Below are positions 11,946 to 45,773 of a stretch of 64,000 nucleotides of DNA, piece by piece. The position numbers and the translations under genes were made by a program. Numbering within the stretch: position 1 is the stretch's first letter; every line of letters starts with the position of its first letter. A model generated the notes under the pieces. That model did no database searches. It saw nothing but the letters and a program-made list of their open reading frames with translations, and was not told the origin of the DNA. Source of the stretch: Heptranchias perlo (taxonomy: Eukaryota); contig NC_090353.1 in NCBI RefSeq assembly GCF_035084215.1, forward strand, positions 13,144,001-13,208,000, in the 5' to 3' direction.

Positions 11946-14195
11946 TGTTGCTCTCAACGGAGTTGCCGCCCTGTCTGCCTCCAGGGCATCATTCACAGCC
12001 TGTTATCGGATGTTGCCAGGGTTCCAATTCAATGCTGTTCTTTCTCTCTCAATGCCTACTGTCAGAAAGTAAAGGAATGTTGTTAAAAAGCAGAACCATC
12101 CCAGCTTAAATAGAGCCAGTGAAAGGGACCTATTAAAACTATAGGATTTGAAGTTTTAATTGAATTACCAGTCCTATATTTTCTTTCCATTTCCTATAGG
12201 AAAGTGCCTGGCTTCCACTTCGCATCAGGAACTCAGCATGTAGGCAAGTGCAGAATCATTTCTCCTTGGTGCAACATGTTGAGGCATTCCTGACAGGCAC
12301 CCTTGAGCAAGACACTGGGCAGGGCTGTGGCCCTGAAGAAATAGTAAATAATGTTGTATTACAAGAAGCACTTGCATACAGCATGGCTGAACAGGGAAAA
12401 CACAGCATGGTTAAACCGGCAAAGCATGGGATATCATGGAAAACAGGGAAAGTACAACAGAGGATGGCAGAGTCGAGAGCAGGGAAAGCACAGCAGAAAG
12501 TAGGGCATGACAGAGCATAGGAGAGCACGTCAAAGCCAATCAGTCAGACTGACCTGGTAATCCTTTGCTGAAATGAACTTATGTGACAGGAATTTTTTCT
12601 GAGTATAAAGTACATGAAACATCTAACTGTAAGGATTACATGTTTTAAACGTAATCTATGTTCAAATTTTACTACAGATGTTTGATGTAAATACTGAAAT
12701 AGAGCAATAGACCAGATCTACTGCAGTTTCTGCTTCAATGTGACCTGGTTTTCACATTGTATTGAGGTCGCCAACCTGAGTATCATCTGAATCTTAATAT
12801 GCTGTGTGTGACCTCAAGGTGGATTTACACTACAGGATTAGCATTGCTTCGAAGTGGTTTTAACTTTGCAACGACGCTGAACTTGCAATGTAAATCCAGA
12901 GTGAGTCCAACTTGACTTTAAAACAAAGCAAACTTGTCAATGAAGAGGTAAATGGTTGTTTAGAGATGGGCCATGTGACACCACTTTAGTTGGACATCAC
13001 TGGGGGTAAATCCAGTGTGGTGCCAAACCTGGTTTACAAAATATTTAGGAGATTTGTTAGGTCTCCTGGGCACTTTTTAAAGCTACCATACCTCCCGTTA
13101 ATTGTTTAGAGAACAAGGATTTTCCTCTTCATGCACCTTAAACATTTAAATTTCTAATTGTTGGAAGAGAACTCTATGCATATATGTATCCAGGTATAGA
13201 CAGAGCTTTCTCCTGGGCAGAACTTTTAGCATTCCAGCCAGATGGGAGCCAAGCAATATAAACAGGTCTTGGACTGGTAACTACAATGTTAATTCACCCT
13301 CACAGCCTACTTGCCCTTACATTTAGAGTATCCCCTTTTAACATTAAAACTTCAGCAGCCATTACAGAGCCTTGCCCGAGTCTGTAAGTCTTCCCATGCA
13401 GACCTCCATTGGCCCTGAATGGAGAACGGCACATAGCCGATCGTGTAACTTGATGCTGCCGACTCACATTACTCCGACCGGCCGGAAGAATCATTTAGTT
13501 TTTACTTGTATTCTGTGCAGGACACAAAAAAAAACCTTTTCATGGTTGAAGGCAACATTTTTGAGCTTCTTTTCAGATGCAGCACATCCCGGTCTGAATT
13601 GATGCCTCACTACTTTGTGCCGTTACACACACCAGAGAAGCAACACACAAAAAATCTAATTCCGTTACTAGGTCCAGAATTCGAATTTACCTCAGAAAAC
13701 AAGTACAGCCAGGATTTTCCCAATCAGATTTGCAGCTGTTAATTAAACTTACATCATCCCTTAAAATGTGTTTTGCAGCTGAAGTTACACTATTTGCTTA
13801 CGGTCACTCTGAGAACCACGGTTTATTTAACAAATGAACAGTAAGGTTCCTGTTAAGGACTATTACAAGAAGTAAGTTGTGTTAGAAAATTTCACTCTCT
13901 TCAATTGAATTGGGCTTTATGTTATTTATTCACAAATTATTCATGAAATATGTTAGTTCTTCCTTCAATGGCACTGTATCAGTTACTGGGACTTCGTTTT
14001 ATGACAGGGATGTAGTGTAACTCAGAGCTGTCCGCTAGTGAGCAAAATCTGAGATGCTTGGCTCCAGTTAGTGCGAGGGTAAACTAGTTCATGGCTTCCG
14101 TAGCTCGAGGGGCTCACAGTACAAGTGTATTGTGCCATGGTGACGTTTACAACTCCTGCCTGTGCTTCCAGCTCTATAAGTGCATAATAAACATA

Positions 14196-18323: not shown

Positions 18324-20281
18324 GGGTGCTAAATTGGACCGTGTAGCACCTATTGTTTCGGTGCTACACAATCTGTCCAACATCCAAGATGGCATCTTGG
18401 CTATGCAAGTACGTCTCCAGTGTGATGTGCCCCGGATGCCATCTTGGTATAGGAGCTAGCGCTTGCACAAATACCGGATGCCGGAAGCCTGTAAAGTAAG
18501 GAGAAAATGGATACAATCAGTGTGCAACACTGATTTAAAGTGATAGACGCCATTTTGGGACTTAACGCTCAACTCAATGCACAGTCTTAACCCTGATCAT
18601 CTGAACGTGTCTTAGAGTGCCTGGGGGACCCCCACCAGTGCTATTTAAAGGGACCATACAGCATTTACAGGTTAAAGGCTGGATTATTTCTTGTGGCTGC
18701 CAAGACGTTTGTAACTGTTTTTGGAGATCTCCTATAGTTGAATACGAGGATTAGGGACATAGCCTAACATTTAGAGCCAGGACATGCAGGAGTAAAGTTA
18801 GGAAATGCTTCTACACGCAAAGGGTGGGAGAAGTTTGGAACGCTCTTCTGCAAACGGCAGCTAATGCTAGCTCAATTGTGAATTCTAAATCTGAGATTGA
18901 TAGATTTCTGTGAACCAAGGGTATTAAGGGATATGGGGCTAAGGCGGATATATGGAGTTAGGTCACAGGTCTGCCATAGGAACATAGGAACAGGAGTAGG
19001 CCATTCAGCCCCTCGTGCCCGCTCCGCCATTTGATAAGATCATGGCTGATCTGTGATCTAACTCCATATACCTGCCTTTGGCCCATATCCCTTAATAACT
19101 TTGGTTGCCAAAAAGCTATCTATCTCAGATTTAAATTTAGCAATGAGCTAGTATCAATTGCCGTTTGCGGAAGAGAGTTCCAAACTTCTACCACCCTTTG
19201 TGTGTAGAAATGTTTTCTAAACTCACTCCTGAAAGGTCTGGCTCTAATTTTTAGACTGTGCCCCCTAGTCCTAGAATCCCCAACCAGCGGAAATAGTTTC
19301 TCTCCATCCACCCTATCCGTTCCCCTTAATATCTTATAAACTTCGATCCTATCACCCCTTAACCTTCTAAACTCCAGAGAATACAACCCCAATTTGTGAA
19401 ATCTCGCCTCGTAACTTAACCCTTGAAGTCCTGGTATCATTCTAGTAAACCTACACTGCACTCCCTCCAAGGCCAATATGTCCTTCCGAAGGTGCGGTGC
19501 CCAGAACTGCTCACAGTACTCCAGGTGCGGTCTAACCAGGGTTTTCTATGGCTGCAGCATAACTTCTGCCCCCTCGTACTCTAGTCCTCTGGATATAAAG
19601 GCCAGCATTCCATTAGCCTTATTGATTATTTTCTGCACCTGTTCATGACACTTCAATGACCTATGTACCTGAACCCCTAAGTCCCTTTGGACATCCACTG
19701 TTTCTAACTTTTTACCATTTAGAAAGTACCCTGTTCTATCCTTTTTTGATCTAAAGTGGATGACCTCACATTTGTCTGCATTGAATTCCATTTGCCACAG
19801 TTTTGCCCATTCATCTAATCTATCAATATCGCTTTGTAATTTTATATTTTCATCTACACTGCTTACAATGCCACCAATCTTTGTGTCATCGGCAAACTTA
19901 GATATGAGACTTTCTATGCCTTCATCTAAGTTGTTAATAAATATTGTAAATAATAGAGGCCCCAAGACAGCTCCCTGCGGGACTCCACTAGTCACATCCT
20001 GCCAATGTGAGTACCTACCCATTGGGCCCGATTTTACCAGGGGTGCGGGTTGGCAGCGGGTGGTCGGGCGGGCTCGAGGAAAACGCGCCAGCCAAATTGA
20101 GTGCGTTGCGCACGCGATCGCGGGATGATTGATGTGATTAGCCGGCAGTTACGGGTTCCGCGCTTCTCAGCTGCGTGCCGGCGGCCTGCGCATGCGCATT
20201 GACGTCTGAGCGATGGTTGCGCTCTATTTAAAGGGGCAGTCCACCAAAGCCCCTCCAGCCACAAACTACACTCCATCAAGG

Positions 20282-22152
20282 ATGGAGGAGCACAGGGGTA
20301 AGGCTGCTCCCCGTTTCACGGACCACGCCCTCCAGGTGCTGCTGGACGGGGTCCGCATGAGGAGGGAGACGCTGTTCCCCACGGATGGAAGGAGGTGCCC
20401 TGCCAGCGCCACCAAGAGGGCATGGGAGGAGGTGGCCGCGGAGGTCACAAGCAGGGGAAACACCACCCGCACTTGGATTCAGTGCCGCAAGAGATTCAAT
20501 GACCTCACCAGGTCCGGAAAAGTGAGTACACTAACGCATTCTGCATCACTCCGTCTTCCACATCACCTCAAACACCTCACAACCCCATCTCCACTGACAG
20601 TACTGCGCTCCCGCACCAATCCTCACAGCCACCCAACTATCATCCTCACAGTGCCTGCACGTACCCACCGTCCCTGTCCCCACTCGACCACTACCACACA
20701 CCCCAATGCCCATACAATGGGATGGCCATGTGGCACACGCATCCTCCCATCCATCTGGCACACGTTCAACCCAATCACACCAATGCTTGAAGCGTCTCAC
20801 ATTGTAATCATCACTCAATAACGTTTTTGTGTTTTGCCCTCACAGGAGAAGAGGGCCAGGAACGCACGCGATAGGGCATGCACCGGAGGGGGCCCGCCAC
20901 ACGAGATGGCCCTGACAGACGCCGAGGTCGAGGCACTGGAGATCAGCCGCACGCTGCATTGCCTGTCGATGGCGGATGGCGAGTCTGGTTCTGGTGAAAC
21001 GGCCGGTAAGGGAAAGCTGGCACTCATCACTCATGATCGTGAATGATCGTAGCATCACATGGCATATGCCGCACCGCCACATTTGGTCACATGCCTGATA
21101 TTTCCCTCTGTTCTCTTCCAGGACCGTCTGCGATCGACGTCTCGGTTGAGGGCGATTCCTCAGAGGACATGCCCGTCTCTGAGGGTGCATCGTCACACAT
21201 GAGCCTTGCATCCACCAGCGCAGATACACACACCTCGGTGGGTCCCCCCCCTCAGCTAGTTGGGATTGCACATGGTGAGTCACCGCGCACACATGAGCAT
21301 GAGCAGACCCTGGTGGCAGGGTCAGCCGCGGAGGGTCCGCGTCGGTGGGAGCACTCTTCTCCAGGCTTTGCTCAGCCGGACCCAGATGCTGAACCCAGGG
21401 GGCCACCTGTCAAAAGGAGAGTCGTCGAGGGGCACCAGAACATTGCTGAGGTACTGGGAGAGGTGCCACGCGCACTCTCCACAATCGCACGGAGGATGGA
21501 GGAGTCCAACTCCTGCATGAGGGGAATGGTGGCACAGGTGCAGGAGGGTATCGCCGAGATAGTGTCGCAGGGACGTGAAGGCATCTCTGAGATAGTGTCG
21601 CGGGTAGGTGTGGGAACGTCTGCGGTGGAGGACAGGCTAGCCTCCCTCGAGCGTCACGCACAGCTCACCAATGAGTCCATCCAGGCCCTCACAACGGCTG
21701 TTCGGATTCAGGGTGAACAACATTCTGCCGCCATCAACAGGTTGACAGATACATTGGAGGTGGCCTTGCAAGGTCTCACCCACGTCATCCAAACTGCCGT
21801 CCAGCAGGGTGGAAGGGGTGATGTGGGCCTTGGCCATGAGAGGGAAGATGGTGAACGGGGAAATGGAAGTGTGGACGCTACTCAAGGCGCCCCCAAGTCT
21901 CACCCGTTGCCCCCCTCTCAACCAGTGCCCGCAATAGTCCATCCTCTCCAGGTGGCCGAGTCTGCCCCTGCACAGGTGCAGGAGGAGCAGTCTGTGGAGG
22001 TGCCCTCACGGGCACCGAAACCCAGGGGGCGTCGGCCCAAAGCATCTACCCGGTCAGGGCACGAACAGGAGCAACCTGCCACCACCTCTGCTGGAGCCAC
22101 AGGGGTAGCACCACGTAGGGGGTCCCGAAAACGAACGCCTAAAGTTCCGTGA
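20282..22152 (+). CDS. Harbinger Myb/SANT-like DNA-binding protein, 3 exons (20282-20521, 20846-21005, 21122-22152), 476 aa
   Basis: APRFTD..W..VAAEV..RTWIQCRKRFNDL trihelix. GT-AG introns in phase 0 and 1 give one continuous frame. TATTTAAA upstream, AATAAA at 22222. Confidence 0.88.
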
Positions 22153-22449
22153 GCACACAGGGATTGCAACAGGGTGTTTGTCGTTTTTTTTAAATTTTCT
22201 ACTCTTTGAATGTCACCACAAAATAAACTCACTTTTTCTCACCAATGCTGCCACCTCTTGTCCATAATTCTGCGGCTTGTGCAATATGTCCCTTCCCTGC
22301 GCCTCATCATGACGACGACCACCCCGTCCCACCCATTGAGCATAATCCAGTGGGTGCAGGTGTACAGGCACCACTCTTCTGTGGAGGGAGCCTGTATGGA
22401 CCCTCGTCTGTGCACGTTATGACATGTGAACGCCTCACACAGTGTGATG

Positions 22450-23685
22450 TTAGGAGAACCGTTGGCATATGAGTGCCTCCCTGGCCTGACGAGCACGCAG
22501 GTGAGCCGGTGTTCGGCGCATGGGTCGTTCCTCCTCCTCTCCCTCTTCCTCCTCCTCCTCTTCCTCCTCCACCTCCTCCTCATTGTCGTCCTCAATGTGG
22601 GTGGCGGGTGTGCATGGGGCCTCCTCCAGCGGCACCCCTCTCTGTAGTGCCATGTTATGCAGGGCACAGCAGACAACTATTATTCGTCCCACTCTGAATG
22701 GCGTGTATTGGAGCGCTCCCCCGGAACGATCAAGGCACCTGAAGCGCATCTTGAGCAGCCCTATAGCCTGCTCAATTGTAGACCTGGTAGCAATGTGGCT
22801 GTCATTATACCGACGCTGTGGCTCGGTAATGGGGTTCCTCAGAGGTGTCATAAGCCACGTGTGCAGGGGATATCCCTTGTCGCCGAGGAGCCAGCCGTTG
22901 CCGGCGTTGGGTGCGTGGAAGAGGGGCGGGACGGTGGACTCCCTGAGGACGAAGGCATCGTGGCAGCTGCCAGGGTATCTGGCGCACACGTGTAGGAATC
23001 TCTGGCGGTGGTCACAAATGAGCTGGGCGTTCATGGAGTGATACCCTTTCCTGTTGATAAACAGCCCTGGCTCATGTGGAGGTGCCCGTATTGCTATGTG
23101 GGTGCAATCGATTACACCCTGCACCCGTGGGAAGCCAGCCACAGCATGGAATCCAACCGCCCTCTCCGTCTGGCTGCGCTCATCCATGGCGAAGTTGATG
23201 TAGGTCGAGGCCCTGCGGAACAACCCATCGGTGACCTGCCTTATGCAATTGTGTGCAGACGACTGACAGACCCCGGTGATGTCCCCCGTGGCACCCTGGA
23301 AGGATCCGGAGGCGAAGAAGTTGAGGGCAGTGGTGACTTTGACGGCGACGGGTAAGAAGATGCTGCTTGGTCCATCCGGGAGCAGCTCGTCATTGAGGAG
23401 GCTGCAGATGTCGGCGACTACCTGGCGAGTGACTCTGAGCCTCCGTATGCACTGCTGCTCAGAGAGGTCCATGAAGCTGAGCCTCGGTCTGTAGACCCTG
23501 TGCGGAGGGTAGTGCCTCCTGCGACGCATCTCTCTCTGCGGATGCCCTCCATCCTGCTGTGCAGGTGGATGTGCCGCAGCACCGTGTTGTGGGGATGCAT
23601 GTCTCTGAGGCGGACGGCGTGGACTGCGAGGCTGCTGAGGCTGGTCATCCTGTTCGTCCTCCGAGGATGTCAACGCAGCACCCAT
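22450..23685 (-). CDS. Harbinger (HARBI1-like) DDE transposase, 411 aa, intact
   Basis: Motifs GVIDCTHI, PGSCHD, LLGDKGY and STIEQAIGLLKMRFRCL, plus CCALHN and an acidic C-terminal tail. Confidence 0.95.
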   Translation of the reverse strand: MGAALTSSEDEQDDQPQQPRSPRRPPQRHASPQHGAAAHPPAQQDGGHPQREMRRRRHYPPHRVYRPRLSFMDLSEQQCIRRLRVTRQVVADICSLLNDELLPDGPSSIFLPVAVKVTTALNFFASGSFQGATGDITGVCQSSAHNCIRQVTDGLFRRASTYINFAMDERSQTERAVGFHAVAGFPRVQGVIDCTHIAIRAPPHEPGLFINRKGYHSMNAQLICDHRQRFLHVCARYPGSCHDAFVLRESTVPPLFHAPNAGNGWLLGDKGYPLHTWLMTPLRNPITEPQRRYNDSHIATRSTIEQAIGLLKMRFRCLDRSGGALQYTPFRVGRIIVVCCALHNMALQRGVPLEEAPCTPATHIEDDNEEEVEEEEEEEEEGEEEERPMRRTPAHLRARQAREALICQRFS

Positions 23686-26600
23686 CTGGCAGGTTTAGGT
23701 TTGCGGGGTTGTGCACGCTAGAAAAGTGTGTCCTCGCACAGGGGTTGGACTTCCACGCCGGTGAATCTTCTTGCTTGGAGGAGGGTGGTGGAGGGCAGGC
23801 GTTGCCCAATGTTACGGAGTGTCCTCCTGCGTTGGTGAAGGCTCTCCCCCCCCCCACCTGTGGAATGCACCTTGGCAGCTGCCACAGGCTGCTGGCTGCA
23901 ACACGTCCGTTGAGAGTGTGAGTGTTTCCCCCAGTATGGGAAACAGTCTCATTTCACTGTAAAATCCGACACCTGTTAAATAAACAGCTCAATCAGGTCA
24001 TTTAATGACCTGAAATACCAAGATAAATACACTCAAGTGGAACCCCGCTGGCTTTAATTGCCTGCGGGATTCCCACCAGCGGGGCCAACGCACGCACCCC
24101 CGCACGTCATCGCGCAACCAGGAAGTGGGCGGGATCGAGGCGCGATCCGGTCCCGCTCCTCGAAACCGGGATTTTAGAGGCCCCCCCGCCGAGAACGCAC
24201 CCGGAACCGGGTGCTAAAATCGGGCCCATTATCCCTACTCTCTGTCGCCTTTCGCTCAGCCAACTTCCTAACCAAGTCCGTACTTTTCCCTCGATTCCAT
24301 GGGCTTCTATCAAAGCTAACAGTCTCTTATGTGGGACCTTATCAAATGCCTTTTGGAAGTCCATATAAGTAACATCCATTGACATTCCCCTGTCCACTAC
24401 TTTCGTCACCTCTTCAAAAAATTCAATCAGGTTTTTCACCTACCTTTCACAAATCCATGCTGGCTCTCTCAGATTAACTGAAAATTCTCGAGGTGTTCAG
24501 TCACCCTATCTTTAATTTTAGACTCCAGCATTTTCCCCACAACAGATGTTAGGCTAACTGGTCTTTAATTCCCAGGTTTCCCTCTCTCTCCTTTCTTAAA
24601 AAGCAGAGTGACATGTGCAATTTTCCAATCTAGAGGAACAGTTCCTGAATCTAGCGAACTTTGAAAGATTATAGTTAGGGCATCTGCAATGTGCTCACCT
24701 ACTCCCTTAAAAATCCTCGGATGGAAACCATCTGGTCATGGGGATTTGTCACTCTTTAGTGCTATTATTTTCTTCATTACTGTTGCTTTACTTATGTTAA
24801 TTTTATTGAGTCCCTGTCCCCAATTCAATATTAGTTTTCTTGGGATTTCCGGCATGCTAGCCTCTTTTTCTACTGTAAATACTGACGTAAAGTAATTGTT
24901 CAACATGTCTGCCATTTCCCCATTGTCAATGACAATATCCCCACTTTCAATTTTTAAGGGGCCAACACTGCTCCTGACCACCCTCTTTTTCTGAATACAA
25001 CTATAATCTTCATATTGGTTTTGCTATCTCTTGCAAGTTTCTTTTCATACTCTCTTTTTGTAGCTCTTACTATCTGTTTTGTGACCCTTTGTTGATCTTT
25101 GTATCTTTCCCATTCGCCAGGATCTGTGCCATTTTTTGCCTTTTTGTATGCCCTTTCCTTATGTCTTATACTGTCCCTTACCTCTTTAGTTGTCCATGGC
25201 TGTTTTTTTTGTCAAGTAGAGTTCTTGCCCTCAGGGGTATAAACCGATTCTGTATCACGTTAAAGTGTTTCTTTAAACATTTCTACTGATCATCAGTCGT
25301 TTTACCCATTAACAGATTTGCCCAGTTTACTGTGGACAGTATCTGTCTCATCCCATTGAAGTCAGCCTTACCCAAGTCTAGAATCTTAGCAGCTGATTCA
25401 CTTTTTTCCCTTTCAAACACTACATTGAACTCGATTATGTTATGATCGCTATTGGATAGATGTTCGCACACAGTTAAGCTGTTAACTAAATCTGGTTCAT
25501 TCCTCATTACTAAATCTAGTATGGCTTGCCCCCTTGTTGCCTCTAAGACATACTGCTGTAGAAAACTATCTCGGACACACTCAAGAAATTCACTACCTTT
25601 CTGACAGTTGCTAGTCTGCTTTTCCCAATCTATGTGAAGGTTAAAGTCCCCCATTAAGACCAGTATACCTTTGTTACACGTTTGTCTAATCTCTGCATTT
25701 ATACAATCTAGCACTTCAGAGCTGCTGCCAGGGGTCCTATACACAACTCCCACTATAGTCTTAGATCCTTTCCTATTTCACAATTCAACCCATAAGGTCT
25801 CTGTTGGCTGCTTACCTCTCATTATATCCTCCTTGATCATTGAAGTGATTTAATCTCTAATCACTAAGGCTACTCCTCCCCCTCTCTCTCCTGCAGACCT
25901 TATAACCCGGTATATTTAGTTCCCAATCCTGACTATCCTGCAGCCATATCTTAGTAATAGCTATCATGTCATACCCTTCAATTTGAATTTGAACCAGTAG
26001 TTCATTTAATTTATTCCTTATACTCTGTGCATTTGTATATAGAACTCTTAGTTGGGCCACACACCCTAGCCTGACCTTCAGCTTTGATGTTGGGTTAATC
26101 GCCTTAAGCCTTCTAGTTTTCACTTCATCTGTAGTGCCTAAAGTACACTTCTTTCTGCTGGTCTACGCTTTTCCCTTTCACTTGTTCTTGAACAACTGTT
26201 TGTACTATTTGTATTGTAAATTTCCCCTGGGTCTTCCCCTCTCTTGCTGCTCTCAACTTTACTCCCTTCTGACTCCCCGCTCAGTTTCCCATCCCCCTGC
26301 CACTCTAGTTTAAACCTTCCCCAATAGCACTAGCAAACACCCCCACGAGGACATTGGTCCCGGTCCTGCTCGGGTGTAACCTGTCTCGCTTGTACAGGTC
26401 CCACCTTCCCCAGAACCGGTCCCAATGTCCCAGGAATCTAAATCCCTCCCTCCTACACCATCCCTGCAGCCACGCATTCATCCGATCTATTCTCCTGTTC
26501 CTATACTCACTAGAGAATGATCTCATTGAATGGTGGAACAGGCTCGAGGGGCTAAATGCCACTGCCACTTGCTGCCTCCTGATATGCGCCCCCTTCTCCT

Positions 26601-31937: not shown

Positions 31938-33597
31938 CCCCCCGCCCCCAACATAGCATCCAAGCATCCAACTGTCTTTTAAATGACTTCAGGAAGTCCA
32001 ATGCACATGTTGATCACTCTTTGTATAAAGAAGAACTTCCTGACATCAGTCCTAAATTTGCTTTTTACTAGTTTGACCCTGTGGCCCTTGTCCTACTATG
32101 ACATTTTAATTTGAAATAGTGTTCAGGAGTTACCTTTTCTATACATTTAGTATCTTGTAAATGACTAAAAGGTCCCCTTTCAATGGTTTCCTTTCAAGAC
32201 TGAAGAACTCCAGTTGCCCTAGTGTATTTATAAGTCAATTCCTTGACATTAGGGATCTGCCTCATGGACCTTCTCTGCATTATCTTGCAAATTCTTAAAA
32301 CTCTTTTCTTGTTTTAGCAGAGTTGTTTTTAATTAATTATTGTCGTTCCATAAATCACAGCACGTTCATGTTTAGCAATGGCACTGTGATAAAATTGCAA
32401 ACTTCTTTTATAGTATGAGAAATTAAACTCCCAGTGCAAACAGGTCTCAGACAGACCAGGAGGTCCCTTGGTACCCATGCCCAGACAGTGTCTTCTAGCA
32501 TCTCTCTCATACTTCTAGACAGGATACAAGTTAATTGTTTGATAATTGACTCATCTCTCATCTCCAGCTCCCAACCTCTCTCAGTTTCTGTTGTAATCTT
32601 TCCTGTTTCTATTTTGTGAAATATACTGTGGTCATTGCTTCTCCTCTCACGTTCTTCTTAGCTCAAAATCTGAAACCTAACGCACTTTTTCTCTTTGAAT
32701 CCTCACTATGTTGAAGTCTGACTATAAGACCATTCGTTTTTATTGGTGGGAGGAGGCCCGTCTGGAGAATAAACACCAGCAGGACCAGTTGGGCTGAATG
32801 GCCTGTTTCTCAGCTGTACATTCTATGTAATTCTATGTAGTTTCTCCCCCTCTTTTCGACCTCCATTAATCAACTGTTCATGAGACACATTTTTATTCTG
32901 AAGCTCACTGTGTGAAGAATCACAGGTATAGTCCCGGGTCCAATCGTTCTATAGGGCAGTGAAATGTTACAACAACAATTTGCATTTATATATCTGGGTC
33001 ATAGTGGCTGAAAAATCAGCCTCTATTAGAGAAACAGAGGCTGCAGGGTTTGAACAGTAACATGGGGCTCGATTTTGCGATCGCGTTTCCGGCGGGTTTC
33101 CAGCGGGGGGGCCCCGAAAATCCCAATATCCGGTCACGTGACCGGATCGCGACGAAATCCCGGCCACTTCCGGGTACCGCGCTGATGTGCGGGGCTGCGC
33201 GCGCAAGCCCCGCTGGTGGGAATCCCGCAGGCAATTAAAGCCAGCGGGGTTCCACTTGAGAGTACTTACCTTGCTTGTTGAGGTCAGTTAATGAGCTGAA
33301 GCAGCTGTCAAAAGAGGAAGTGTGGGATTTTAGGTTCAAAGCAGTCAGTTTCCCACACTGGGGGAAACAGGACCCTTCAAACCAGGCGTGTTGCAGCCAG
33401 CAGCCTGTGGCAGGTGCCAAGGTGCGCTCCACGGGGGAGAGCCCTCACCCACGCAGGAGGCCACCGCGTCACATAGGGCAACCCCTGCCCTCCACCACCC
33501 CCCGCCAAGCCAGAGGACAGACCGACACGAAACCGCAGCCCCAGTCCGAGGAACCACCCACCTACCCTGCACAACCCCTCAGACCAACACCTGTCAG

Positions 33598-34854
33598 ATG
33601 GGTGGTGCGTTGACATCGTCGGAGGACGAACAGGATGACCAGCCCCAGCAGCCTCGCAGTCCACGCCGTCCGCCTCGGAGAGGTGGGGCCCCCCAACACG
33701 GTGCTGCGGCACACCCACCTGCACAGAAGGAGGGAGGGCAACCGCAGAGAGAGATGCGTCGCAGGAGGCACTACCCTCCGCACAGGGTGTACAGAGCGAG
33801 GCTCAGCTTCATGGACCTCTCCGAGGAGCAGTGCATACGTCGGCTCAGAGTCAATCGCCAGGTAGTCGCCGACATCTGCAGCCTCCTTAACGACGAGCTG
33901 CTCCCTGATGGACCAAGCAGCATCTTCTTACCTGTCGCCGTCAAAGTCACCACTGCCCTCAACTTCTTCGCATCCGGTTCCTTCCAGGGTGCCACCGGGG
34001 ACATCACCGGGGTCTGTCAGTCCTCTGCACACAAGTGCATAAGGCAGGTCACCGATGGGTTGTTCCGCAGGGCCTCCCACTACATCAACTTCGCCATGGA
34101 CGAGCGCAGCCAGATGGAGAGGGCGGTTGGATTCCATGCCATGGCCGGCTTCCCACGGGTGCAGGGTGTAATCGACTGCACCCACATCGCAATACGGGCA
34201 CCTCCACATGAGCCAGGGCTGTTCATCAACAGGAAGGGGTATCACTCCATGAACGCCCAGCTCATCTGTGACCACCGCCAGAGATTCCTACACGTGTGCG
34301 CCAGATACCCCGGCAGCTGCCACGATGCCTTCGTCCTCAGGGAGTCCGCCGTCCCGCCCATCCTGCAGGCACCCAACGCCGGCAACGGCTGGCTCCTCGG
34401 CGACAAGGGGTATCCCCTCCACACGTGGCTCATGACACCTCTGAGGAACCCCATCACCGAGCCGGAGCGTCGGTACAATGACAGCCACACTGCTACCAGG
34501 TCTACAATTGAGCAGACCATAGGGCTTCTCAAGATGCGCTTCAGGTGCCTTGATCGTTCTGGGGGAGCGCTGCAATACACACCATTCAGAGTGGGACGAA
34601 TCATAGTTGTCTGCTGTGCCCTGCACAACATGGCCCAACAGAGAGGGGTGCCGCTGGAGGAGGCCCCATCCACACCCGCCACCCACATTGAGGAAGGCGA
34701 GGGCGAGGAGGAGGAGGAGGAGGAGGAGGAGGAGGCGGAGGAGGTGGAGGAGGAGGACGCGCCAGAGGATGTTGGACGACCCATGCGCCGAGCCGCGACT
34801 CACCGGGATGGTCGCCGGGTCAGGGAAGCACTCATACGTCAACGGTTCTCCTAG
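33598..34854 (+). CDS. Harbinger DDE transposase, intact, 418 aa from MGGALTSSED
   Basis: Same DDE motifs (IDCTH, GDKGY, TIEQ). Start chosen by homology with the ATG at 23685. Confidence 0.93.
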   Translation: MGGALTSSEDEQDDQPQQPRSPRRPPRRGGAPQHGAAAHPPAQKEGGQPQREMRRRRHYPPHRVYRARLSFMDLSEEQCIRRLRVNRQVVADICSLLNDELLPDGPSSIFLPVAVKVTTALNFFASGSFQGATGDITGVCQSSAHKCIRQVTDGLFRRASHYINFAMDERSQMERAVGFHAMAGFPRVQGVIDCTHIAIRAPPHEPGLFINRKGYHSMNAQLICDHRQRFLHVCARYPGSCHDAFVLRESAVPPILQAPNAGNGWLLGDKGYPLHTWLMTPLRNPITEPERRYNDSHTATRSTIEQTIGLLKMRFRCLDRSGGALQYTPFRVGRIIVVCCALHNMAQQRGVPLEEAPSTPATHIEEGEGEEEEEEEEEEAEEVEEEDAPEDVGRPMRRAATHRDGRRVREALIRQRFS

Positions 34855-35151
34855 AGTCAGACACTGCGAGGCGCTCGCATCTCCTCACCTGCACATGCGA
34901 GCGGCCATACCAGCCCCCTCCACTGAAGAGTGCTGCCAGTAATCCTGCACCCACAGCAGTGTGCCCAATGGGTGGCAGCAGGTGTTCGCCGTCATGATGG
35001 CCTCCACGGAACGCAACTATTGCACAAGCCGCGGAAGAATGGACGAGAGGTGGCAGGAGTGGTGAGAATAGACTATTTAATATCTCGAATGTGACATTAT
35101 ATAAGAAAAAAAGTACAAAATAATAAACACCCTGGTGTATTCCCTTTGTGA

Positions 35152-36991
35152 TTATAAGGCCTTTGCAATTCTTTTCCGGGAACCCCTACGTGGTGCTACC
35201 CCTGTGGCTCCAGCAGAGGTAGTGGCAGGTTGCTCGTCTTCTTGCCTTGACCGGGTAGATGCTTTTGGCGGACGGCCCCTGGGTTTCGGTGCCCGTGTTG
35301 GCACCTCCACAGACTGCTCCTCCTGCACCGGGGCAGGGGCAGACTCGGCCACCTGGAGAGGAGGCACCATTGCGGGTACTGGTTGAGAGGTGGGCGACGG
35401 GTGGGACGTGGGGACGCCTTAATAGGCGTCCCCGCTTCCATGTCCCCTGTCACCATCATCCCTCTCTTGGCCTCGGCCCACATCACCCCTTCCACCCTGC
35501 TGGACGGCAGTTTGGATGGCATGTGTGAGGCCTTGCAAGGCCACCCCTAGTGTATCCCTCAGACTGTTGGTGGCGTCGGAATGTTGCTCACCCTGAATCC
35601 GTACAGACGTTGTCAGGGCCTGCATGGACTCGATCTGGAGCTGTGCGTGACGCTCGAGGGAGGCCAGCCTGTCCTCCACCGCAGACAGTCCCGCACCTAC
35701 CTGCGACACTGTGTCGCCGGTACCCTCCTGTGCCTGCGCCACCAATGCCCACATGCAGGAGGTGGACTCCTCCATCGCCTGCGCTATTGTGGACAATGCG
35801 CGCGGCACCTCTGCCAGTACCTCAGCAATTAGCTGGTGGCCCTCGACGACTCTCCTTTTCACTGGTGGCCCCCTGGGTTCAGCATCTGGGTCCGGCTGAG
35901 CAGAGCCTGGAGATGAGTGCTCCCTCCGTCGCGGACCCTCCGCGGCTGCCCCTGCCACCAGGGTCTGCTCATGCTCACTCGTGCGCGGTGACTCACCAAG
36001 TGCTACCCCAACTAGTTGGCGAGGGGGACCCACCGAGGTGCGTGTCTCTGCGCTGGTGGATGGTTGGCTCTGATGTGACGATGCACCCTCAGAGACCACC
36101 ATGTCCTCTGAGGAATCGCCCTCCACGATCGCTTCACCCAAAGACGGACCTGCAAGAGAACAGAGGGCACTTTGAGGCATATGGACCAACTTGACAGTGC
36201 GCCTGATGGCAGGTGATGAGACGGTAACTCGCGATCATGGGTGTTGAGTGTCAGCTTTCCCTTACCGGCCGTTTCGGCAGCGACACACTCGCCATCGGCC
36301 ACCGACAGGCAATGTCGCGTGCGGGCGAGGTCGAGCGCCTCCACCTCTGCGTCGGTGAGCTCCACCACTTGCGGCGGCCCACCTCCGGTGCGTGCCCTTT
36401 CCCTATTGTTCTTGCTTCTCTTCTCCTGTGAAGGCAAAACACAGATGTGTGAGTGGGTGCGTCTTGCATCGTGAGACGCATCGAGCATCGGTGTGGTTGG
36501 GTTGAGCATGGCGCGGAACGGATGGGAGGAAGCGTGGGCCACGTGCCCATCCCATTGCATGGGGATTGGGGTGTGTGGTAGTGTTCGGGTGGGGTCAGGG
36601 ACGGTAGGTACTTGCGTGCACGGCGAGGATGGTGAATGAGTGGCTGTGAGGATTGCTGATGGAGCGCAGTGGTGGCTGTGCAGGAGGGGGTTGTGATCTG
36701 CTTGGCGTGATGGTGGGGACGGGATGTGGGAGGGTGCGTTGGTGTACTCACCTTGCCAGACCTAGTCAGGTCATTGAAGCGCTTGCGGCACTGCTCCCAA
36801 GTCCTTGGGGTGTTGCCCCTGCTGCTCACCTCCGCCGCCACCTCTGCCCATGCCTTCCTGGTTGCGGCGGCAGGGAACTTGCGTCCATCTTCTGGGAAGA
36901 GTGTTTCCCTCCTCCTCCTCACGCCCTCCAGCATCAGCTGCAGTGCCAGATCTGAAAAACGGGGCGCAGCCTTTCCCCTTTGCTGAGCCAT
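35152..36991 (-). pseudogene. Harbinger Myb/SANT gene (exons 36991-36752, 36425-36266, 36149-35152) with a premature TAA at 35421-35419
   Basis: Exon sizes 240 and 160 nt match copy 1. TAA replaces the CAA (Gln) seen in copies 1 and 3; the downstream frame continues in phase to ..RRGSRKRIAKAL*. Confidence 0.85.
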
Positions 36992-37249
36992 CGTCTCAAA
37001 CCGCTTGCTTGTAGCAGGAGGGGCTTTGGGAGACTGCCCCTTTAACTGGAGCTCCTACATCACGTCGACGGTACTGCGCATGCGCAGCCGGCCGGCACGC
37101 AGCTGGGGAGCGCAGAACCCGGAAGCAGGGCTTAATCGGTCCAATTATCCCGCGATCGCGTGGGGGACGCACACGATTAGCCGTCCGCGTTTTCCACGCT
37201 CCCGGAGGACCACCCGCTGGGAACCCGCAGGCCTGCTAAATTCGAGCCC

Positions 37250-40484: not shown

Positions 40485-43400
40485 TAACGGAGGACTGGAA
40501 GAGACAAACATCATTAGAATAAAGAATAGTTCAGAAATAGGAAGGGTGAAATATAAAGCAGACTAAGGTGGGTTTGGAGTGCATGTGCGTAAATGCATGG
40601 AAGGTGGTAAATAAAGTTGGTGAGCATGCAGGCACAAGTCGCCACATGGGATTATATTATAGTGGTGATAACAGAGACCTGGCTCAAACAAGGTACTTAA
40701 TATTCCTGGCTACAAAATATTCAGGAAAGATAGGGAAGGAAACAAAGGCGGGGGGTGGGGCGGTGGTGGCGGCAGTATTGATCAAAGATACTGTTGCAGC
40801 ACTACAAAGGGATGATATACTTGAGGGTTCAAAGACAGAATCTACTTGGTTAGAATTAAGGAACAGTAGAGTTGCTATTACGCTACTGGATGTATTCTAT
40901 AGGCCACCAAATAGTGGGAAGCAGATAGAAGAGCAAATTTGAAGGCAACTTGCAGAAAGATGCAAGAACTTTAGAGTAGTGATAATGGAGGACTTCAATT
41001 ATCCTAATATAGACTGGGAAAATAGCAGTGTAAAGGACAAAGAGGGGGAGGAGTTCCTGAAATGTGTAAAAGAAAACTTTCTTGATCAGTATATTTCCAG
41101 CCCAATGAGGAATGAAGCAGTGCTGGATCTAGCTCTGAGGAATGAAGTGGGGCAAGTGGAGCACGTTTCAGTGGGAGAGCATTTGGGAAACAGTGATCAC
41201 AATATCATTAGGTTTAGAGTAGTTATGGAAAAGGACAAGGAAAAATCAAATATGAAAATACTCAACTGGAAGAAGGCTAATTTCAGTGAGTTGAAAGGGG
41301 ATCTGGCCCAGGTGGATTGGAATCAAAGATTGGCAGATAAAACGGTGAATGAGCAATGGGAGGCCTTCAAGGAGGAGTTAGTTCGGGTGCATTCCCACAA
41401 GGGAGAAAGGAAAGGCATCCAAAGCTAAAGTTCCCTGGATTACTAAAGGTACAGAGATTAAAATGAAACAGAAAAAAGAGGCTTATGATAAATGTCAGGT
41501 TCATAATGCAATAGAGAATCAAGCTGAATACAGAAAGTACAGAAGAGAACAGAAAAAGGAAATAAGAGAGGCAAAGAGAGAGTATGAGAATAGATTAGCG
41601 GGGAACATAAAAGGGAACCCAAAAGTCCTTTATAAACATATAAATGGTAAAAGAGTAGTCAAAGAAAGGGTGGGGCCGATTAGGAACCAAAAAGGAGATC
41701 TTGTGGAGGCAGAGGGCATGGCTGAGGTACTAAATGAATACTTTGCAAATGTCTTTACTGAGGAAGTGGATGGTGCCAATGTCACAGTAAAGGAGGAGAT
41801 AGTAGAGAGAAATTGGATCGGATAAAAATAGATGAAGAGGAGGTACTTAAAAGGTTGTCAGCGCTCAAAGTAGAAAAGTCACCCGGTCCGGATGGGATGC
41901 ATCCTAGGTTGCTGAGGAAAGTAAGGGTGGAAATTGCAGAGGCTCTTTCAATCCTCCTTAGATATGGGAGTGGTGCCAGAGGTCTGGAGGATTGCAAATG
42001 TTTCACTCCTGTTCAAAGAAGGGGAGAGGGATAAACCCAACAAGTACAGGCCAGTTAACCTAACATCAGTGGTGGGAAAACTTTTAGAGATAATAATCTG
42101 GAACAAAATTAAATGGCACTTGGAAAAATATGGGTTAATAAATGAAAGACATCACAGATTTTGTAAAGACAAATCGTGTTTGACTGACTTGATTGAGTTC
42201 TTTGATGAAGTAGTGCAGTTGATGAGGGTAGTGCAGTTGATGTTGTGTATATAGACTTTCAAAAGGCGTTTGATAAAGTGCCACTAATAAACTTATTAGC
42301 AAAATTGAAGCCCATGGGATTAACGGGACAGTGGCTGCGTGGATATGAAATTGGCTAAGGGACAGAAAGCAAAGAGTAGTGTGAAAGGTTGTTTTTCAGA
42401 CTGGGGAGAAGTAGACAGTGGTGTCCCCTATGAGTCGGTATTAGGACCACTTTTTGATTTTTATTAAAGAGTATAATTTCAATGTTTGCAGATGATATGA
42501 AACTTGGAAATGTAGTAAACAGTGAGGAGGATAGTAAAAGACTTCAGGAGGGTATAGACAGACTGGTGAAATGGGCTGACACATGGCAGATAAAATTTAA
42601 CGCAGAGAAATGTGAAGTGATTCATTTTGGTAGGAAGAATGAGGAGACCCAATATAAACTAAATGGTACAATTTTAAAGGGGGTGCAGGAACAGCGAGAC
42701 CTGGGGGTGTACATACACAAATCTTTGAAGGTGGCAGGACAAGTTGGGTAGGCTGTTAAAAAGGCATATGGGATCTTTGGCTTTATAAATACAGGCATAG
42801 GGGTCAATTTTCGGATGGCCGAGCGGGTGCGTTCGTGGTGGGGGGGCTGCTAAAATAGGGGATTCCCGGGGCAGGTCAGGAGCCCGGTTCCAACCCGCCC
42901 ACTTCCGGGTTCCCCAATGACGCGCTTAGATGCGCACGCAGCCCCCGCATGTGGGACTCCCACCGGTAATTAAAGCCGGCGGGATCCCACTTAAACCAAT
43001 TAATTACATAGTTCAGGTCATTTGCAGACCTGATTGGGAGGATATTTTAGGAGGGGTGGGATTTTCATGTCAACTGAGCGTGTTTCCCATATTGGGGGAA
43101 ACACTCCCAGTTGAAACAGACGTGTTGCAGCCACCAGTCTGTGGGAGCTGCAAAGGTCCATTTGACAGGTGTGGGGGGAGACCCTCACTCATTGCAGGAG
43201 GCCACTCTGTCACTTTGGACAAAGTTTGGCCTGCACCACCCTCCTCCTAACACAAAAATTCACCAACTTGGAACCTCAACCCCGGTGTCCAGACACATTT
43301 ACCTACCTTGCGGACCCCTTCAAATGTACATCTTCCAGATGGGGGCCGCAATAGCTGCAGTCATGACCTCCTCGGAGGACGAACAGCATCACCAGCCTTG

Positions 43401-45773
43401 CCGGCCACGCCGTCCACCTCAGACACGTGGAGCTCCACAACACAGTGCTGTGACACATCCACCTGCACAGCAGGAGGGAGGGCAAATGCAGAAAGAGATG
43501 CGTTGCAGAAGGCACTACCCTCGCCACAAGGTCTACAGACCGAGGCTCAGCTTCCTGGACCTCTCTGAGGAGCAGTGCACACAGAGGCTCAGAGTCACTC
43601 GACATGTAGTCGTGGACATCTGCAGCCTCCTTCATGCCGAGCTGCTCCCGGCTGGCCCGAGCACCATCTTCTTACCTGTCGCTGTCAAAGTCACCACTGC
43701 CCTCAACAACTTCTCCTCCGCATCCTTCCAGTGTGCCACCGGGGACATCGCCGGCGTCTCTCAGTCGTCTGCACAAAAGAGCCCTGCAAGTACACCTACA
43801 CCCACTCTGCAGTGACCCAATGAGTGGCATCAGGCGTGGATCTTCATGGTGATCCTCAGGAAAGGGAATTATTGCACAAACCAGACAAGATTTGCAAAGA
43901 TGTGGCAGTAGTGGTGATAACAACATTTAATGTGGTTGGCAAAAGAAAAAAATCTAAATGAAAAACATGACATTCCATCATACACCCTTGTGCATCCCCT
44001 TTGTGCTCACAAAACCTTAGCCTTACGTTTACGGGAACCCCTACGTGGTGCTACCCCTGTAGCTTCAGCAGATGTAGTGGCAGTTTGCTCTTGTCCATGC
44101 CCCGACTGATGAGATGCTTTGCGCGGACGCCCTCTGGGTTTCGGTGCCTGTGAGGGCCCCTCCAAAGACTGCTCCACCTGCACCTGTGCAGGAACAGACT
44201 CGGCCACCTGGAGATGAGGCAGCATTGCGGGTACTGGTTGAGAGGGGGGCAACGGGTGAGACGTGGGAGCGTTTTGAGTGGCGTCCCCACTTCCATGTCA
44301 CCTTTCGCCATCATCCTTCTCCTGGGCCTTCTGGCATCTCTTCTCCTATCAAGGCAAAACACAGAGAGTCGTGATTGAGTGATGGTTGCATAGTGACCCA
44401 CTGCATGCATTGGTGTGAGTGGAGGTGACTATAAGGGAGATGCATGGGAGGGTGCATGTGAGACATAGCCATGAGATTGTATGAGGATTGGGTTGCATGG
44501 TAGTGATCGAATGGGAACTGGGGCGGTGAGTAAGTGCAGGCAAGGTGAGGATGATGGTTGAGTGGATGTGAGGAGTGATGCGAGAGCGTTGTGGTGGCAG
44601 TGCAGAAGGACTTGTGTGGTGGTGGAGGTGATGTGGAAGATGGAGTGTGGGAGAATGCGTAAGTATACTCACTTTGGCTGACCTGGTTAGGTCATTAAAG
44701 CACTTCCTGCACTGGACCCAGGTTCGGGAGATGTTACTGCTGCTGCTGACCTCCTCTGCCACCTCGAGCCAGACCTTCTTGGTGGCAGAGGCAGGCCACT
44801 TCCTCCTGTCCGCTGGGAAAAACGTTTCCCTCCTCCTCCTGACCCCATCGAGCAGCACCTGGAGTGAGGAGTCTGAGAACCTTGGGGCAGCCTTGCCTCT
44901 GGGCTGCTCCGTGCTGCCAATTTGGTTCTTTGCTGCAGGAGGAGCATTGAAGGACTGCCCCTTTAAATAGGACTCCTCCTGCTGACAGCCTGTGATGCGG
45001 GTGCGCAGTGCGTCCGCAGCTAAGGTCTGCAACGGGAAACCTGGAAGCACGGGTAAGTACCTTCAATTAGGCTGCGATCGCGTGCGGAGCACACTGATTT
45101 CACTGGGCGCATTACCCACGCGCCCAGTCGACCCCCCATTGCCAACCCGCCTCCCTCCTAATATCAGGCCCATAGAGTAGAAAAGCAAGGAAGTTATGCT
45201 AAACCTTTATAAAACATTGGTTTGGCCCCAGCTGAAGTATTATGGCCATTTCTAGGCACCACACTTTAGGAAGGATGTCAAGGCCTTGGAGAGGGTACAG
45301 AGGAGATTTACTAGAATGGTATCAGGGATGTGGCACTTCAATTATGTGGAGAGACTGGAGAAGCTGGGATTCTCCTTAGAGCAGAGACGGTTAACAGGAG
45401 ATTTGAGAGAGGTGTTCAAAATCACGAAGGGTCTCAATACAGTAAATAAGGAGAAATTGTTTCCAGTGGCAAAAGGGTCGGTAACCAGAGGACACAGATT
45501 TAAGATAGTTGGCAAAAAAAGAGGTGACATGAGGAAAAAAATTTATGCAGTGAGTTGTTATGATCTGGAATGCACTGCCTGAAAGGGTGTTGGAAGCAGA
45601 TTCAATAGTAACTTTCAAAAGGGAATTGGATAAATACTGAAAGGGGAAAATTTTGCAGGGTTATGGGGAAAGAGGAGGGAAGTAGGACTAATTGGATAGC
45701 TCTTTCAAAGAGCCAGCACAGGCACGATGGGCCGAATGGTCTCCTTCTGTGTTGTATTAGTCTATGATTCTAT
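40485..45773 (+). mobile_element. CR1 LINE (APE+RT, decayed), inserted in a minus-strand SINE (40280-40484 / 45774-45915) and interrupted by Harbinger 3
   Basis: EDFNYPNIDW, SDHNII, KSPGPDGMHPR, FADD; ctatgattctat tail. Confidence 0.9.
42800..45171. mobile_element. Internally deleted non-autonomous Harbinger (2372 bp)
   Basis: TSD ATA; termini ggggtcaatttt / aatatcaggccc; truncated transposase 43339-43815 (+) lacking DDE; Myb exon 1 at 44912-44673 (-) with ATG>ACG. Confidence 0.88.

What the first reader, a model, noticed from the sequence alone, without database searches (positions are those of the whole stretch)
20024..24227. Apparently complete, potentially active two-component Harbinger transposon in a probable shark genome
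Seen: a perfect 13-bp TIR, a clean ATT TSD, an unbroken 411-aa transposase with D-D-E (IDCTH/GDKGY/TIEQ), and a convergent Myb/SANT gene that splices (240+160+1031 nt, GT-AG) into one 476-aa frame, with CpGs largely retained. Known: Harbinger transposition needs both a transposase and a Myb-like protein; the vertebrate example tested (Harbinger3_DR) was a reconstructed consensus; HARBI1/NAIF1 are the domesticated pair. Inference: this is a natural, recent, possibly still mobile element and a candidate genome-engineering tool.
Basis: partly seen in the sequence, partly recalled or inferred. Interest (0 to 1): 0.8.

Follow-up and report, generated by a model that had tools for sequence, protein, structure and literature searches.

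The report
Intact two-gene Harbinger transposon in shark
This is a structurally complete copy of a very abundant cut-and-paste DNA transposon (Harbinger type) in a shark genome, one of many similar copies, and nothing yet shows that it still moves.

Summary
Window 20024-24227 is a 4,204-bp PIF/Harbinger element. It has perfect 13-bp terminal inverted repeats, an ATT target-site duplication, an open 411-aa DDE transposase gene (minus strand) and a convergent three-exon Myb/SANT gene. LINE copies without the element give a 4,207-base empty-site joint, which confirms the ends. Annotated Heptranchias perlo proteins use the same exon junctions; one is 100% identical to exons 2-3.

The copy is probably young: it differs from most of the family's read depth at 10 listed sites, and 48,489 contig pieces from one DNA run match at 95% or more. 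At that divergence, open frames are expected by chance in 37-82% of copies. No spliced joint, RNA evidence or insertion polymorphism was found.

The copy is not unique. The window holds two older copies. This scan had already flagged at least eight "apparently intact" copies on other DNA of the same genome (unchecked notes). The three TSDs seen (ATT, ATG, ATA) are not the canonical TWA.

Verdict: a new member of a known kind, of modest interest.

The parts
20021..20023 (.). Left target-site duplication, ATT
   Evidence: Read. The 4,207-base empty-site joints equal the element plus 3 bases.
20024..20036 (+). Left terminal inverted repeat, the perfect 13-bp core. It is the start of an imperfect repeat of about 48 nt that carries conserved GCGGGT and CAGCGGG boxes.
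20282..20521 (+). Myb/SANT gene exon 1 (80 codons, DNA-binding domain). An in-frame upstream ATG lies at 20213.
   Evidence: Pfam Myb_DNA-bind_5 E=1.1e-10. The exon ends at ...RSGK exactly where the paralogues P0122 and P0123 continue with EKR. ORF 20213-20821 is listed.
20846..21005 (+). Myb/SANT gene exon 2 (160 nt)
   Evidence: Intron 1 has a GT donor (GTGAGT) and a CAG acceptor. The translation abuts exon 1 and exon 3 in the alignment with P0121-P0123.
21122..22152 (+). Myb/SANT gene exon 3 (1,031 nt including the stop), with a long helical part and a basic C-terminal tail
   Evidence: 100% identical over 342 aa to the Heptranchias perlo protein P0121. The junction ETA-G-PSA is used in P0121.
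22222..22227 (+). AATAAA signal 70 nt after the Myb stop codon
   Evidence: The same scan of 22101-22500 found no AATAAA or ATTAAA on the minus strand for the transposase gene.
22450..23685 (-). Transposase ORF, 411 aa, with D193, D269 and E305
   Evidence: AlphaFold2 model: mean pLDDT 78.1. The structural matches are DDE transposases and integrases.
24215..24227 (-). Right terminal inverted repeat, the perfect 13-bp core
24228..24230 (.). Right target-site duplication, ATT
19546..20022 (-). Host LINE reverse-transcriptase fragment, downstream half
   Evidence: RVT_1 E=8e-13, profile positions 115-194
24231..24439 (-). Host LINE reverse-transcriptase fragment, upstream half
   Evidence: RVT_1 E=4.1e-05, profile positions 69-109 (below Pfam's own cut-off taken alone)
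33065..37249 (-). Second full-length copy, 81.9% identical and in the opposite orientation. The transposase ORF is open (418 codons from 33598). Myb exon 3 carries one in-frame stop. TSD is ATG.
42800..45171 (-). Third copy, internally deleted, 73-78% identical. It keeps both ends, Myb exon 1 and the N-terminal part of the transposase. TSD is ATA.

Best explanation
Window 20024-24227 is a structurally complete, autonomous-type member of the PIF/Harbinger superfamily of cut-and-paste DNA transposons. It inserted into a LINE reverse-transcriptase sequence in a hexanchiform shark genome, most likely Heptranchias perlo. It is a fairly young copy of a very abundant family that contains several subfamilies.

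The mechanism below is inferred from the family, not shown here. The two convergent genes are transcribed from promoters in the two end regions. The Myb/SANT protein binds short subterminal motifs; the candidates are the conserved GCGGGT and CAGCGGG boxes within about 50 nt of each end. It also binds the transposase and brings it into the nucleus. The DDE transposase (D193, D269, E305) cuts at the GGGCCC... termini and reinserts the element, making a 3-bp duplication.

Whether this copy, or the family, moves today is unresolved.
For: Anatomy: TIR, TSD, transposase and Myb gene are all present.

Precise insertion: empty-site joints skip 4,207 bases in 28 X1 contigs and 1 X10 contig. The RVT_1 profile is contiguous across the site.

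Fold: the AlphaFold2 model has mean pLDDT 78.1 and pTM 0.76. D193 lies in strand 188-199, D269 just after strand 265-267, and E305 in helix 288-314. The first 34 of 50 VIA-align rows are all DDE transposases or retroviral integrases: piggyBac Z 9.6 (rmsd 5.1, 235 aligned) and Tn5 Z 8.8 (rmsd 5.3, 231 aligned).

Splice model: exon translations abut exactly on P0122 and P0123, and P0121 equals exon 2 plus exon 3 at 100% identity. All four splice sites are conserved in copy 2.

Selection during family history, copy 1 against copy 2: dN/dS is 0.24 for the transposase (371 of 411 aa identical), 0.18 for Myb exon 1, 0.39 for exon 2 and 0.48 for exon 3. Non-coding parts are only 70-77% identical.

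Cis-sites: terminal and subterminal boxes are conserved across all six ends of the three copies. 15 of the 19 GCGGGT sites in the window lie inside the three copies.

Youth and abundance: 48,489 X1 contig pieces laid, 16,488 of them at 99% or more. Only 10 of the 30 listed in-element sites have most X1 depth differing from this copy. The small runs X5-X8 still hold 52-57% of its 31-letter words.

Mechanism in relatives: passages read in PMC9710019 and PMC9179366.
Against: No transcript evidence. None of the 15 joints listed is a splice joint (114 more were not shown). The contigs of X5 and X7, guessed to be RNA, cover introns, TIR tips and LINE flanks unspliced, so they may be DNA.

The annotated model identical to this locus (P0121) starts inside exon 2 and omits the Myb domain.

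No annotated shark transposase is more than 76% identical to this one, so no independent gene model supports the transposase ORF.

At 0.24-1.2% divergence, 37-82% of copies would keep both frames free of stops by chance. Open frames therefore do not show function.

Two of the seven private changes I checked by reading the sequence (20090 and 20995) sit where copy 1 has CA or TG and the other copies have CG. That is the pattern of CpG decay after insertion.

No canonical poly(A) signal was found for the transposase gene.

The TSDs (ATT, ATG, ATA) are not the TWA that defines classical PIF/Harbinger (PMC4482050).

E305 is shared by only 9 of 17 aligned relatives and D193 by 13 of 17 (my count on the alignment).
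Confidence: 0.85

Rival explanations
1. The copy and its family are mobile now. Both genes are expressed in the germline and the element still excises and reinserts, so the insertion at 20024 may be polymorphic among individuals.
For: Both ORFs are open. The 13-bp TIRs and the TSD are perfect. There are very many near-identical contig pieces (16,488 at 99% or more). Other windows of the same genome carry first-reader notes of at least eight 'apparently intact' copies of 4,102-4,204 letters (unchecked). Both genes were under purifying selection while the subfamilies diverged.
Against: No spliced joint or RNA holder was found. No second individual was available. This copy already differs from the family majority at 10 or more sites, including CpG-decay-type changes (read). 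Open frames are expected by chance at this age.
Confidence: 0.3
2. It is an inert young fossil. The family stopped moving, or is fully silenced, and this copy merely has not yet acquired a stop or frameshift. It may also carry a disabling missense change.
For: The chance of staying stop-free by substitution alone is 0.37-0.82 at the estimated divergence. Private changes include D13, where 61% of the other depth reads H. CpG observed/expected is 0.665, not 1. No expression evidence was found. Copy 2 shows how decay proceeds: one in-frame stop in Myb while the transposase stays open.
Against: The abundance of pieces at 99% or more and the several other apparently intact copies noted by the scan (unchecked) suggest activity that is recent on a shark time-scale. 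Two of the three private coding changes examined are synonymous.
Confidence: 0.5
3. It is a domesticated host gene pair like HARBI1/NAIF1, not a transposon.
For: Public annotation names the relatives 'putative nuclease HARBI1' and 'myb-related transcription factor, partner of profilin-like'.
Against: It has TIRs and a TSD, sits inside a LINE, occurs three times in this 64-kb window, and matches tens of thousands of contig pieces in one run. It is only 42-43% identical to the turtle and emu HARBI1-named proteins P0071 and P0081, which lack the first D.
Confidence: 0.02

Closest known systems
Harbinger3_DR of zebrafish (reconstructed, tested in human cells)
   Same: [quoted passage not shown] Terminal inverted repeats and a 3-bp duplication. 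In that element both proteins are needed, the Myb-like protein brings the transposase into the nucleus, and it binds a 9-bp subterminal motif (PMC9710019 passages; PMC3016246 passages).
   Different: Harbinger3_DR was rebuilt from dead copies and inserts into AAACACCWGGTCTTT (PMC3016246). The shark copy is a natural sequence with TSD ATT in a different context, and its activity is untested. No Harbinger3_DR sequence was available for alignment, and the original paper PMC2290759 is not held.
Annotated shark and ray 'putative nuclease HARBI1' paralogues and the H. perlo Myb-like proteins P0121-P0127
   Same: The first 40 rows are all elasmobranch proteins carrying DDE_Tnp_4. The best is 64% identical over 86% of the query (P0001), or 76% over 66% (P0005). 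All 8 hits to Myb exon 3 are from H. perlo, at 57-100% identity. They share the same three-exon layout.
   Different: These are database gene models without described ends. None is the transposase of this copy. They are named as host genes, whereas this locus is plainly a transposon.
Ping/Pong/mPing of rice (naturally active PIF/Harbinger)
   Same: Same superfamily, with the same requirement for ORF1 (Myb-like) plus the transposase (abstract of PMC2836001 in the listing; PMC9710019).
   Different: A plant element with TWA-type TSDs (PMC4482050). It was not aligned here.
HARBI1/NAIF1, the domesticated vertebrate pair
   Same: Derived from the same kind of two-protein system (PMC9710019).
   Different: By recall they are single-copy host genes without ends. 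The element here has ends, a TSD and very many copies.

Membership tests
PIF/Harbinger superfamily (PHIS) | Transposase with the DDE_Tnp_4 / PIF-type catalytic domain | tested here: met
   Pfam PF13359 E=1.3e-36 over residues 192-344, covering profile positions 1-158 of 158. D193, D269 and E305 are present. Their placement in the predicted secondary structure matches the description in PMC4482050.
PIF/Harbinger superfamily (PHIS) | Second gene encoding a Myb/SANT-like DNA-binding protein | tested here: met
   Exon 1 matches PF13873, E=1.1e-10.
PIF/Harbinger superfamily (PHIS) | Terminal inverted repeats, usually starting with GG, on an autonomous element of about 4.1 kb | tested here: met
   GGGCCCGATTTTA at both ends. 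Length is 4,204 bp, against an average of about 4,124 bp in PMC4482050.
PIF/Harbinger superfamily (PHIS) | 3-bp target-site duplication | tested here: met
   ATT at both sides, and an empty-site joint of 4,204+3 bases.
PIF/Harbinger group in the strict sense | TSD composition TWA | tested here: not met
   ATT, ATG and ATA in the 3 of 3 copies in the window. n=3, and the two older copies may have mutated.
NuwaI group (Myb-bearing; includes zebrafish families) | TSD CWG | tested here: not met
   0 of 3 copies. The definition comes from PMC4482050.
Pangu group | TSD ANT, and a second ORF without a known motif | tested here: not met
   Only 1 of 3 TSDs (ATT) fits ANT, and the second gene has a Myb domain.
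Active (currently mobile) transposon | Spliced transcripts of both genes | tested here: inconclusive
   No splice joint among the 15 listed (114 unseen). No run is on record as RNA.
Active (currently mobile) transposon | Insertion polymorphism, identical copies at several loci, or transposition in an assay | not testable with these tools
   Only one sample of organism A was available.
Domesticated HARBI1/NAIF1-type host genes | Single-copy locus without transposon ends | tested here: not met
   TIRs, a TSD, three copies in the window and 48,489 matching contig pieces.

The most novel reading that the evidence does not exclude
The sevengill-shark genome carries a living, very high-copy Harbinger family. 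Several natural, unreconstructed copies, this one included, still encode a working transposase and Myb pair, and the family uses a target duplication (AT followed by any base, after a C) that fits none of the TSD-defined PHIS groups. That would be the first natural autonomous vertebrate Harbinger shown to move.
Probability: 0.25. Interest if true: 0.55.

Novelty: new member of a known kind. Interest (0 to 1): 0.33.

Why it matters
If it is active, it would be a natural vertebrate two-protein transposon that can be tested without reconstruction. It would also be a marker of recent genome dynamics in a slowly evolving shark lineage. In the literature I could search, Harbinger elements of cartilaginous fishes appear only as lines in repeat tables (PMC8455134, PMC12498223), and one survey found none in the elephant shark (PMC9179366). 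A described, abundant family with intact copies would therefore fill a small gap. As it stands, this is one ordinary copy among many.

Tried and rejected
1. Domesticated gene pair: rejected (ends, TSD, many copies).

2. Splicing evidence from reads: sought with read laying and not found. The contigs of X5 and X7 are unspliced, and the nature of those runs is unknown.

3. Copy number: the depth sums are stated by the tool not to be copy numbers, so I give none.

5. Solved relatives by sequence: none for the transposase (E up to 0.01) or for Myb exon 1 (E up to 1). Foldseek against the PDB gave no match at E 0.001 or better; the best was 8ea3_X at 1.2e-02. VIA-align gave middling Z values, but the first 34 rows were uniformly DDE transposases or integrases.

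6. Short repeats within each end: the repeat finder found nothing in the Myb end and only short two-copy families in the other end. The cross-copy alignment was more informative.

7. Repbase and Dfam could not be searched, so an exact match to a named family is not excluded.

8. Literature searches found no description of an intact shark Harbinger. Supplementary tables of PMC4482050, PMC9179366, PMC8455134 and PMC12498223 were closed and might list such families.

9. Pangu and NuwaI membership: rejected on TSD and ORF content.
Full report
**What is there**

The stretch 20024-24227 begins and ends with GGGCCCGATTTTA in inverted orientation. These are the only two matches in the 64-kb window at up to one mismatch (0.05 expected by chance). 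The repeat finder extends the pair to 17 nt at 94%. ATT flanks both ends.

The element is GC-rich (0.57-0.60) in a 0.39-0.45 background. Its CpG observed/expected is 0.665, against 0.26 and 0.48 in the flanks.

**The insertion is real and its ends are exact**

Both flanks encode, on the minus strand, parts of one reverse-transcriptase domain. The right flank matches RVT_1 profile positions 69-109 and the left flank positions 115-194.

Contigs of public runs laid on 19600-24650 include LINE copies that lack the element. 28 contigs of run X1 and one 2,337-nt contig of run X10 join 20017 to 24225. They skip 4,207 bases, with six letters fitting either side. That equals 4,204 bases plus a 3-bp duplication. 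These are paralogous empty sites. They say nothing about polymorphism at this locus.

**Transposase**

The minus-strand ORF 22450-23685 (411 aa) matches DDE_Tnp_4 at E=1.3e-36 over the whole profile.

In an alignment with copy 2 and 15 database relatives, I count D at the first position in 13 of 17 sequences, D at the second in 16 of 17, and E at the third in 9 of 17.

An AlphaFold2 model built on that alignment has mean pLDDT 78.1 and pTM 0.76. D193 sits in strand 188-199, D269 just after strand 265-267, and E305 in helix 288-314. This is the arrangement that PMC4482050 describes for this superfamily (section read).

- Sequence search of solved structures found nothing.
- Foldseek found nothing at E 0.001 or better.
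- In the VIA-align search, the first 34 of 50 rows are all DDE transposases or retroviral integrases: piggyBac Z 9.6, Tn5 Z 8.8. The Z values are middling, but the family is uniform.
- Residues 1-54 and 357-390 (an acidic run) are predicted disordered.

**Myb gene**

Exon 1 (20282-20521) matches Myb_DNA-bind_5 at E=1.1e-10. Exons 2 and 3 match no Pfam family. Each exon is open in its own frame, and the introns start with GT and end with AG, with strong consensus around them.

The 476-aa length is the sum 80 + 53 + 1 split codon + 342.

Support for the junctions comes from homology. A search with exon 3 alone returned 8 proteins, all named Heptranchias perlo.
- P0121 (376 aa) is 100% identical. 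It consists of exon 2, from an internal Met, followed directly by exon 3.
- P0122 (497 aa) and P0123 (465 aa), 80-81% identical, run ...RSGK|EKR... and ...ETA-G-PSA... exactly where the window's exons end and begin.
- All four splice sites are conserved in copy 2, although the introns are only about 77% identical.

Two caveats apply. I cannot see what evidence those gene models rest on. And the model identical to this locus omits exon 1, the DNA-binding domain.

An AATAAA follows the Myb stop at 22222. No canonical signal was found for the transposase gene.

**Family context in the window**

BLAST of the element against the window finds two more copies.
- Copy 2 (33065-37249) is full length, inverted and 81.9% identical.
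- Copy 3 is internally deleted and 73-78% identical. I place its ends at 42800-45171.

Copy 2 has an open transposase frame and a Myb exon 3 with one in-frame stop. Copy 3 keeps both ends, Myb exon 1 and the N-terminal part of the transposase.

Between copies 1 and 2, nucleotide identity varies by region:

| Region | Identity |
|---|---|
| Non-coding parts | 70-77% |
| Myb exon 3 | 86% |
| Transposase | 92% |

dN/dS is 0.24 for the transposase, 0.18 for Myb exon 1, 0.39 for exon 2 and 0.48 for exon 3. Both genes were therefore under purifying selection while the subfamilies diverged. That is what is expected of lineages that kept transposing.

The six ends of the three copies share the terminal GGGCCCGATTTTAGCA. 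They also share two subterminal boxes, GCGGGTT and CAGCGGGNGGNC, within about 48 nt. 15 of the 19 GCGGGT sites in the window lie inside the three copies. By analogy with the 9-bp subterminal motif bound by the Harbinger3_DR Myb-like protein (PMC9710019, passage), these boxes are candidate binding sites. This is an inference.

**Age and abundance**

- Run X1 gave 48,489 contig pieces at 95% or more, 16,488 of them at 99% or more. This count includes the LINE flanks.
- Runs X5-X8, each with only 89-132 million letters of contigs, still hold 52-57% of the element's sampled 31-letter words. This is only possible if many copies share those words.
- Of the 40 difference sites listed, 30 lie inside the element. 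At 10 of these, most X1 depth differs from this copy: 20090, 20601, 20995, 21049, 21118, 22169, 22192, 23395, 23649 and 23968. Another 39 sites were not shown.
- That brackets the distance from the family majority at roughly 0.24-1.2%.
- In coding sequence, 20995 and 23395 are synonymous. At 23649 this copy has D13 where 61% of the depth gives H.
- At 20090 and 20995 this copy has CA or TG where the others have CG (read). This pattern fits methylation-driven decay after insertion.
- A run labelled as another organism (X10) holds six pieces with 0-8 differences each (16 in 1,177 letters by my sum). I do not know how that organism is related.

**How much do the open frames mean?**

3.1% of all single-base changes in the 2,658 coding bases would create a stop. 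At 0.24-1.2% divergence, the chance of no stop by substitution is therefore 0.82-0.37. Intactness fits youth. It does not show selection on this copy, or activity.

**Expression**

No listed run is on record as RNA. The two runs guessed to be RNA (X5, X7) gave contigs that run unspliced:
- from exon 1 into intron 1 (20221-20756);
- from exon 2 into intron 2 (20880-21048);
- from intron 2 into exon 3 (21050-21236).

Some of their pieces also stop at the TIR tip. That looks like DNA or unprocessed RNA. None of the 15 listed joints is a splice joint, and 114 joints were not shown. Splicing of this copy therefore stayed unconfirmed.

**Comparison with what is known**

The architecture, size and 3-bp duplication fit PIF/Harbinger (PMC4482050).

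The mechanism I propose is taken from relatives:
- Both proteins are required.
- The Myb-like protein binds the transposase and is needed for nuclear localisation.
- The Myb-like protein binds subterminal motifs.

Sources are the passages in PMC9710019 and PMC9179366. Harbinger3_DR is described as reconstructed, with the target AAACACCWGGTCTTT (PMC3016246). The original paper is not held.

The three duplications seen here (ATT, ATG, ATA, each preceded by C) fit neither TWA, CWG nor C|TNA|G, and only one fits ANT. With n=3 and two old copies, this is a lead and not a result.

**Novelty**

- The first 40 rows of the transposase search are all sharks and rays named 'putative nuclease HARBI1'. None is above 76% identity.
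- Harbinger-type repeats are listed for the whale shark and the grey reef shark (passages).
- One survey found none in the elephant shark (PMC9179366).
- My searches found no description of an intact two-gene shark Harbinger. Repbase, Dfam and all supplementary tables were out of reach.
- Within this scan, 78 notes on the same genome mention Harbinger. At least eight describe 'apparently intact' two-gene copies of 4,102-4,204 letters on other pieces. These are unchecked AI notes, which I could not test directly.

**Verdict**

This is a young, structurally complete copy of an abundant shark Harbinger family. It is a new member of a known kind, and present-day mobility is untested.

Noticed in passing
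window 33065-37249: Second full-length Harbinger, 81.9% identical to the first and in the opposite orientation. TSD is ATG. The transposase frame is open (418 codons from 33598). Myb exon 3 is interrupted by one in-frame stop.
   Followed up: yes
window 42800-45171: Internally deleted Harbinger (2,372 bp, TSD ATA). It keeps both ends, Myb exon 1 and the N-terminal non-catalytic part of the transposase. It resembles the 'mini-Harbinger' family noted elsewhere in this genome (s1-927416).
   Followed up: partly
window 20021-20023, 33062-33064, 42797-42799 and their partners: The three target duplications are ATT, ATG and ATA, each preceded by C. None is the canonical TWA of PIF/Harbinger.
   Followed up: partly
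window 22450-23685 versus 20282-20521, compared with copy 2: Divergence between copies 1 and 2 is mosaic. Synonymous divergence is 0.20 in the transposase but 0.98 in Myb exon 1, and 23-30% of bases differ in non-coding parts. This might reflect exchange between subfamilies.
   Followed up: no
window about 21538-21603: In-frame 33-nt tandem duplication in Myb exon 3 of copy 1 (QEGIAEIVSQGREGISEIVSR). It is absent from copy 2 and from P0122 and P0123. (table 5c) lists a joint 21527 to 21564 in X1.
   Followed up: partly
window 20213-20281: An in-frame ATG 23 codons upstream of the proposed Myb start. The paralogue P0122 is annotated with a similar N-terminal extension, so the true start is uncertain. 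A TATTTAAA motif lies between the two ATGs.
   Followed up: no
window 9410-11948: Tandem array of a 22-bp unit (CCTTCAACTGTGGCCCACCTCC), 115.5 copies, 91% matches, with strong C-over-G skew.
   Followed up: no
window 19546-20022 and 24231-24439 (minus strand): The host LINE belongs to an extremely abundant family. Its contigs give the highest depth sums in every run laid.
   Followed up: partly
run X10 (coded organism C) on window 20025-23492: A run labelled as another organism holds six pieces of this element with 0-8 differences each. This could mean a close relative, slow evolution or transfer.
   Followed up: no
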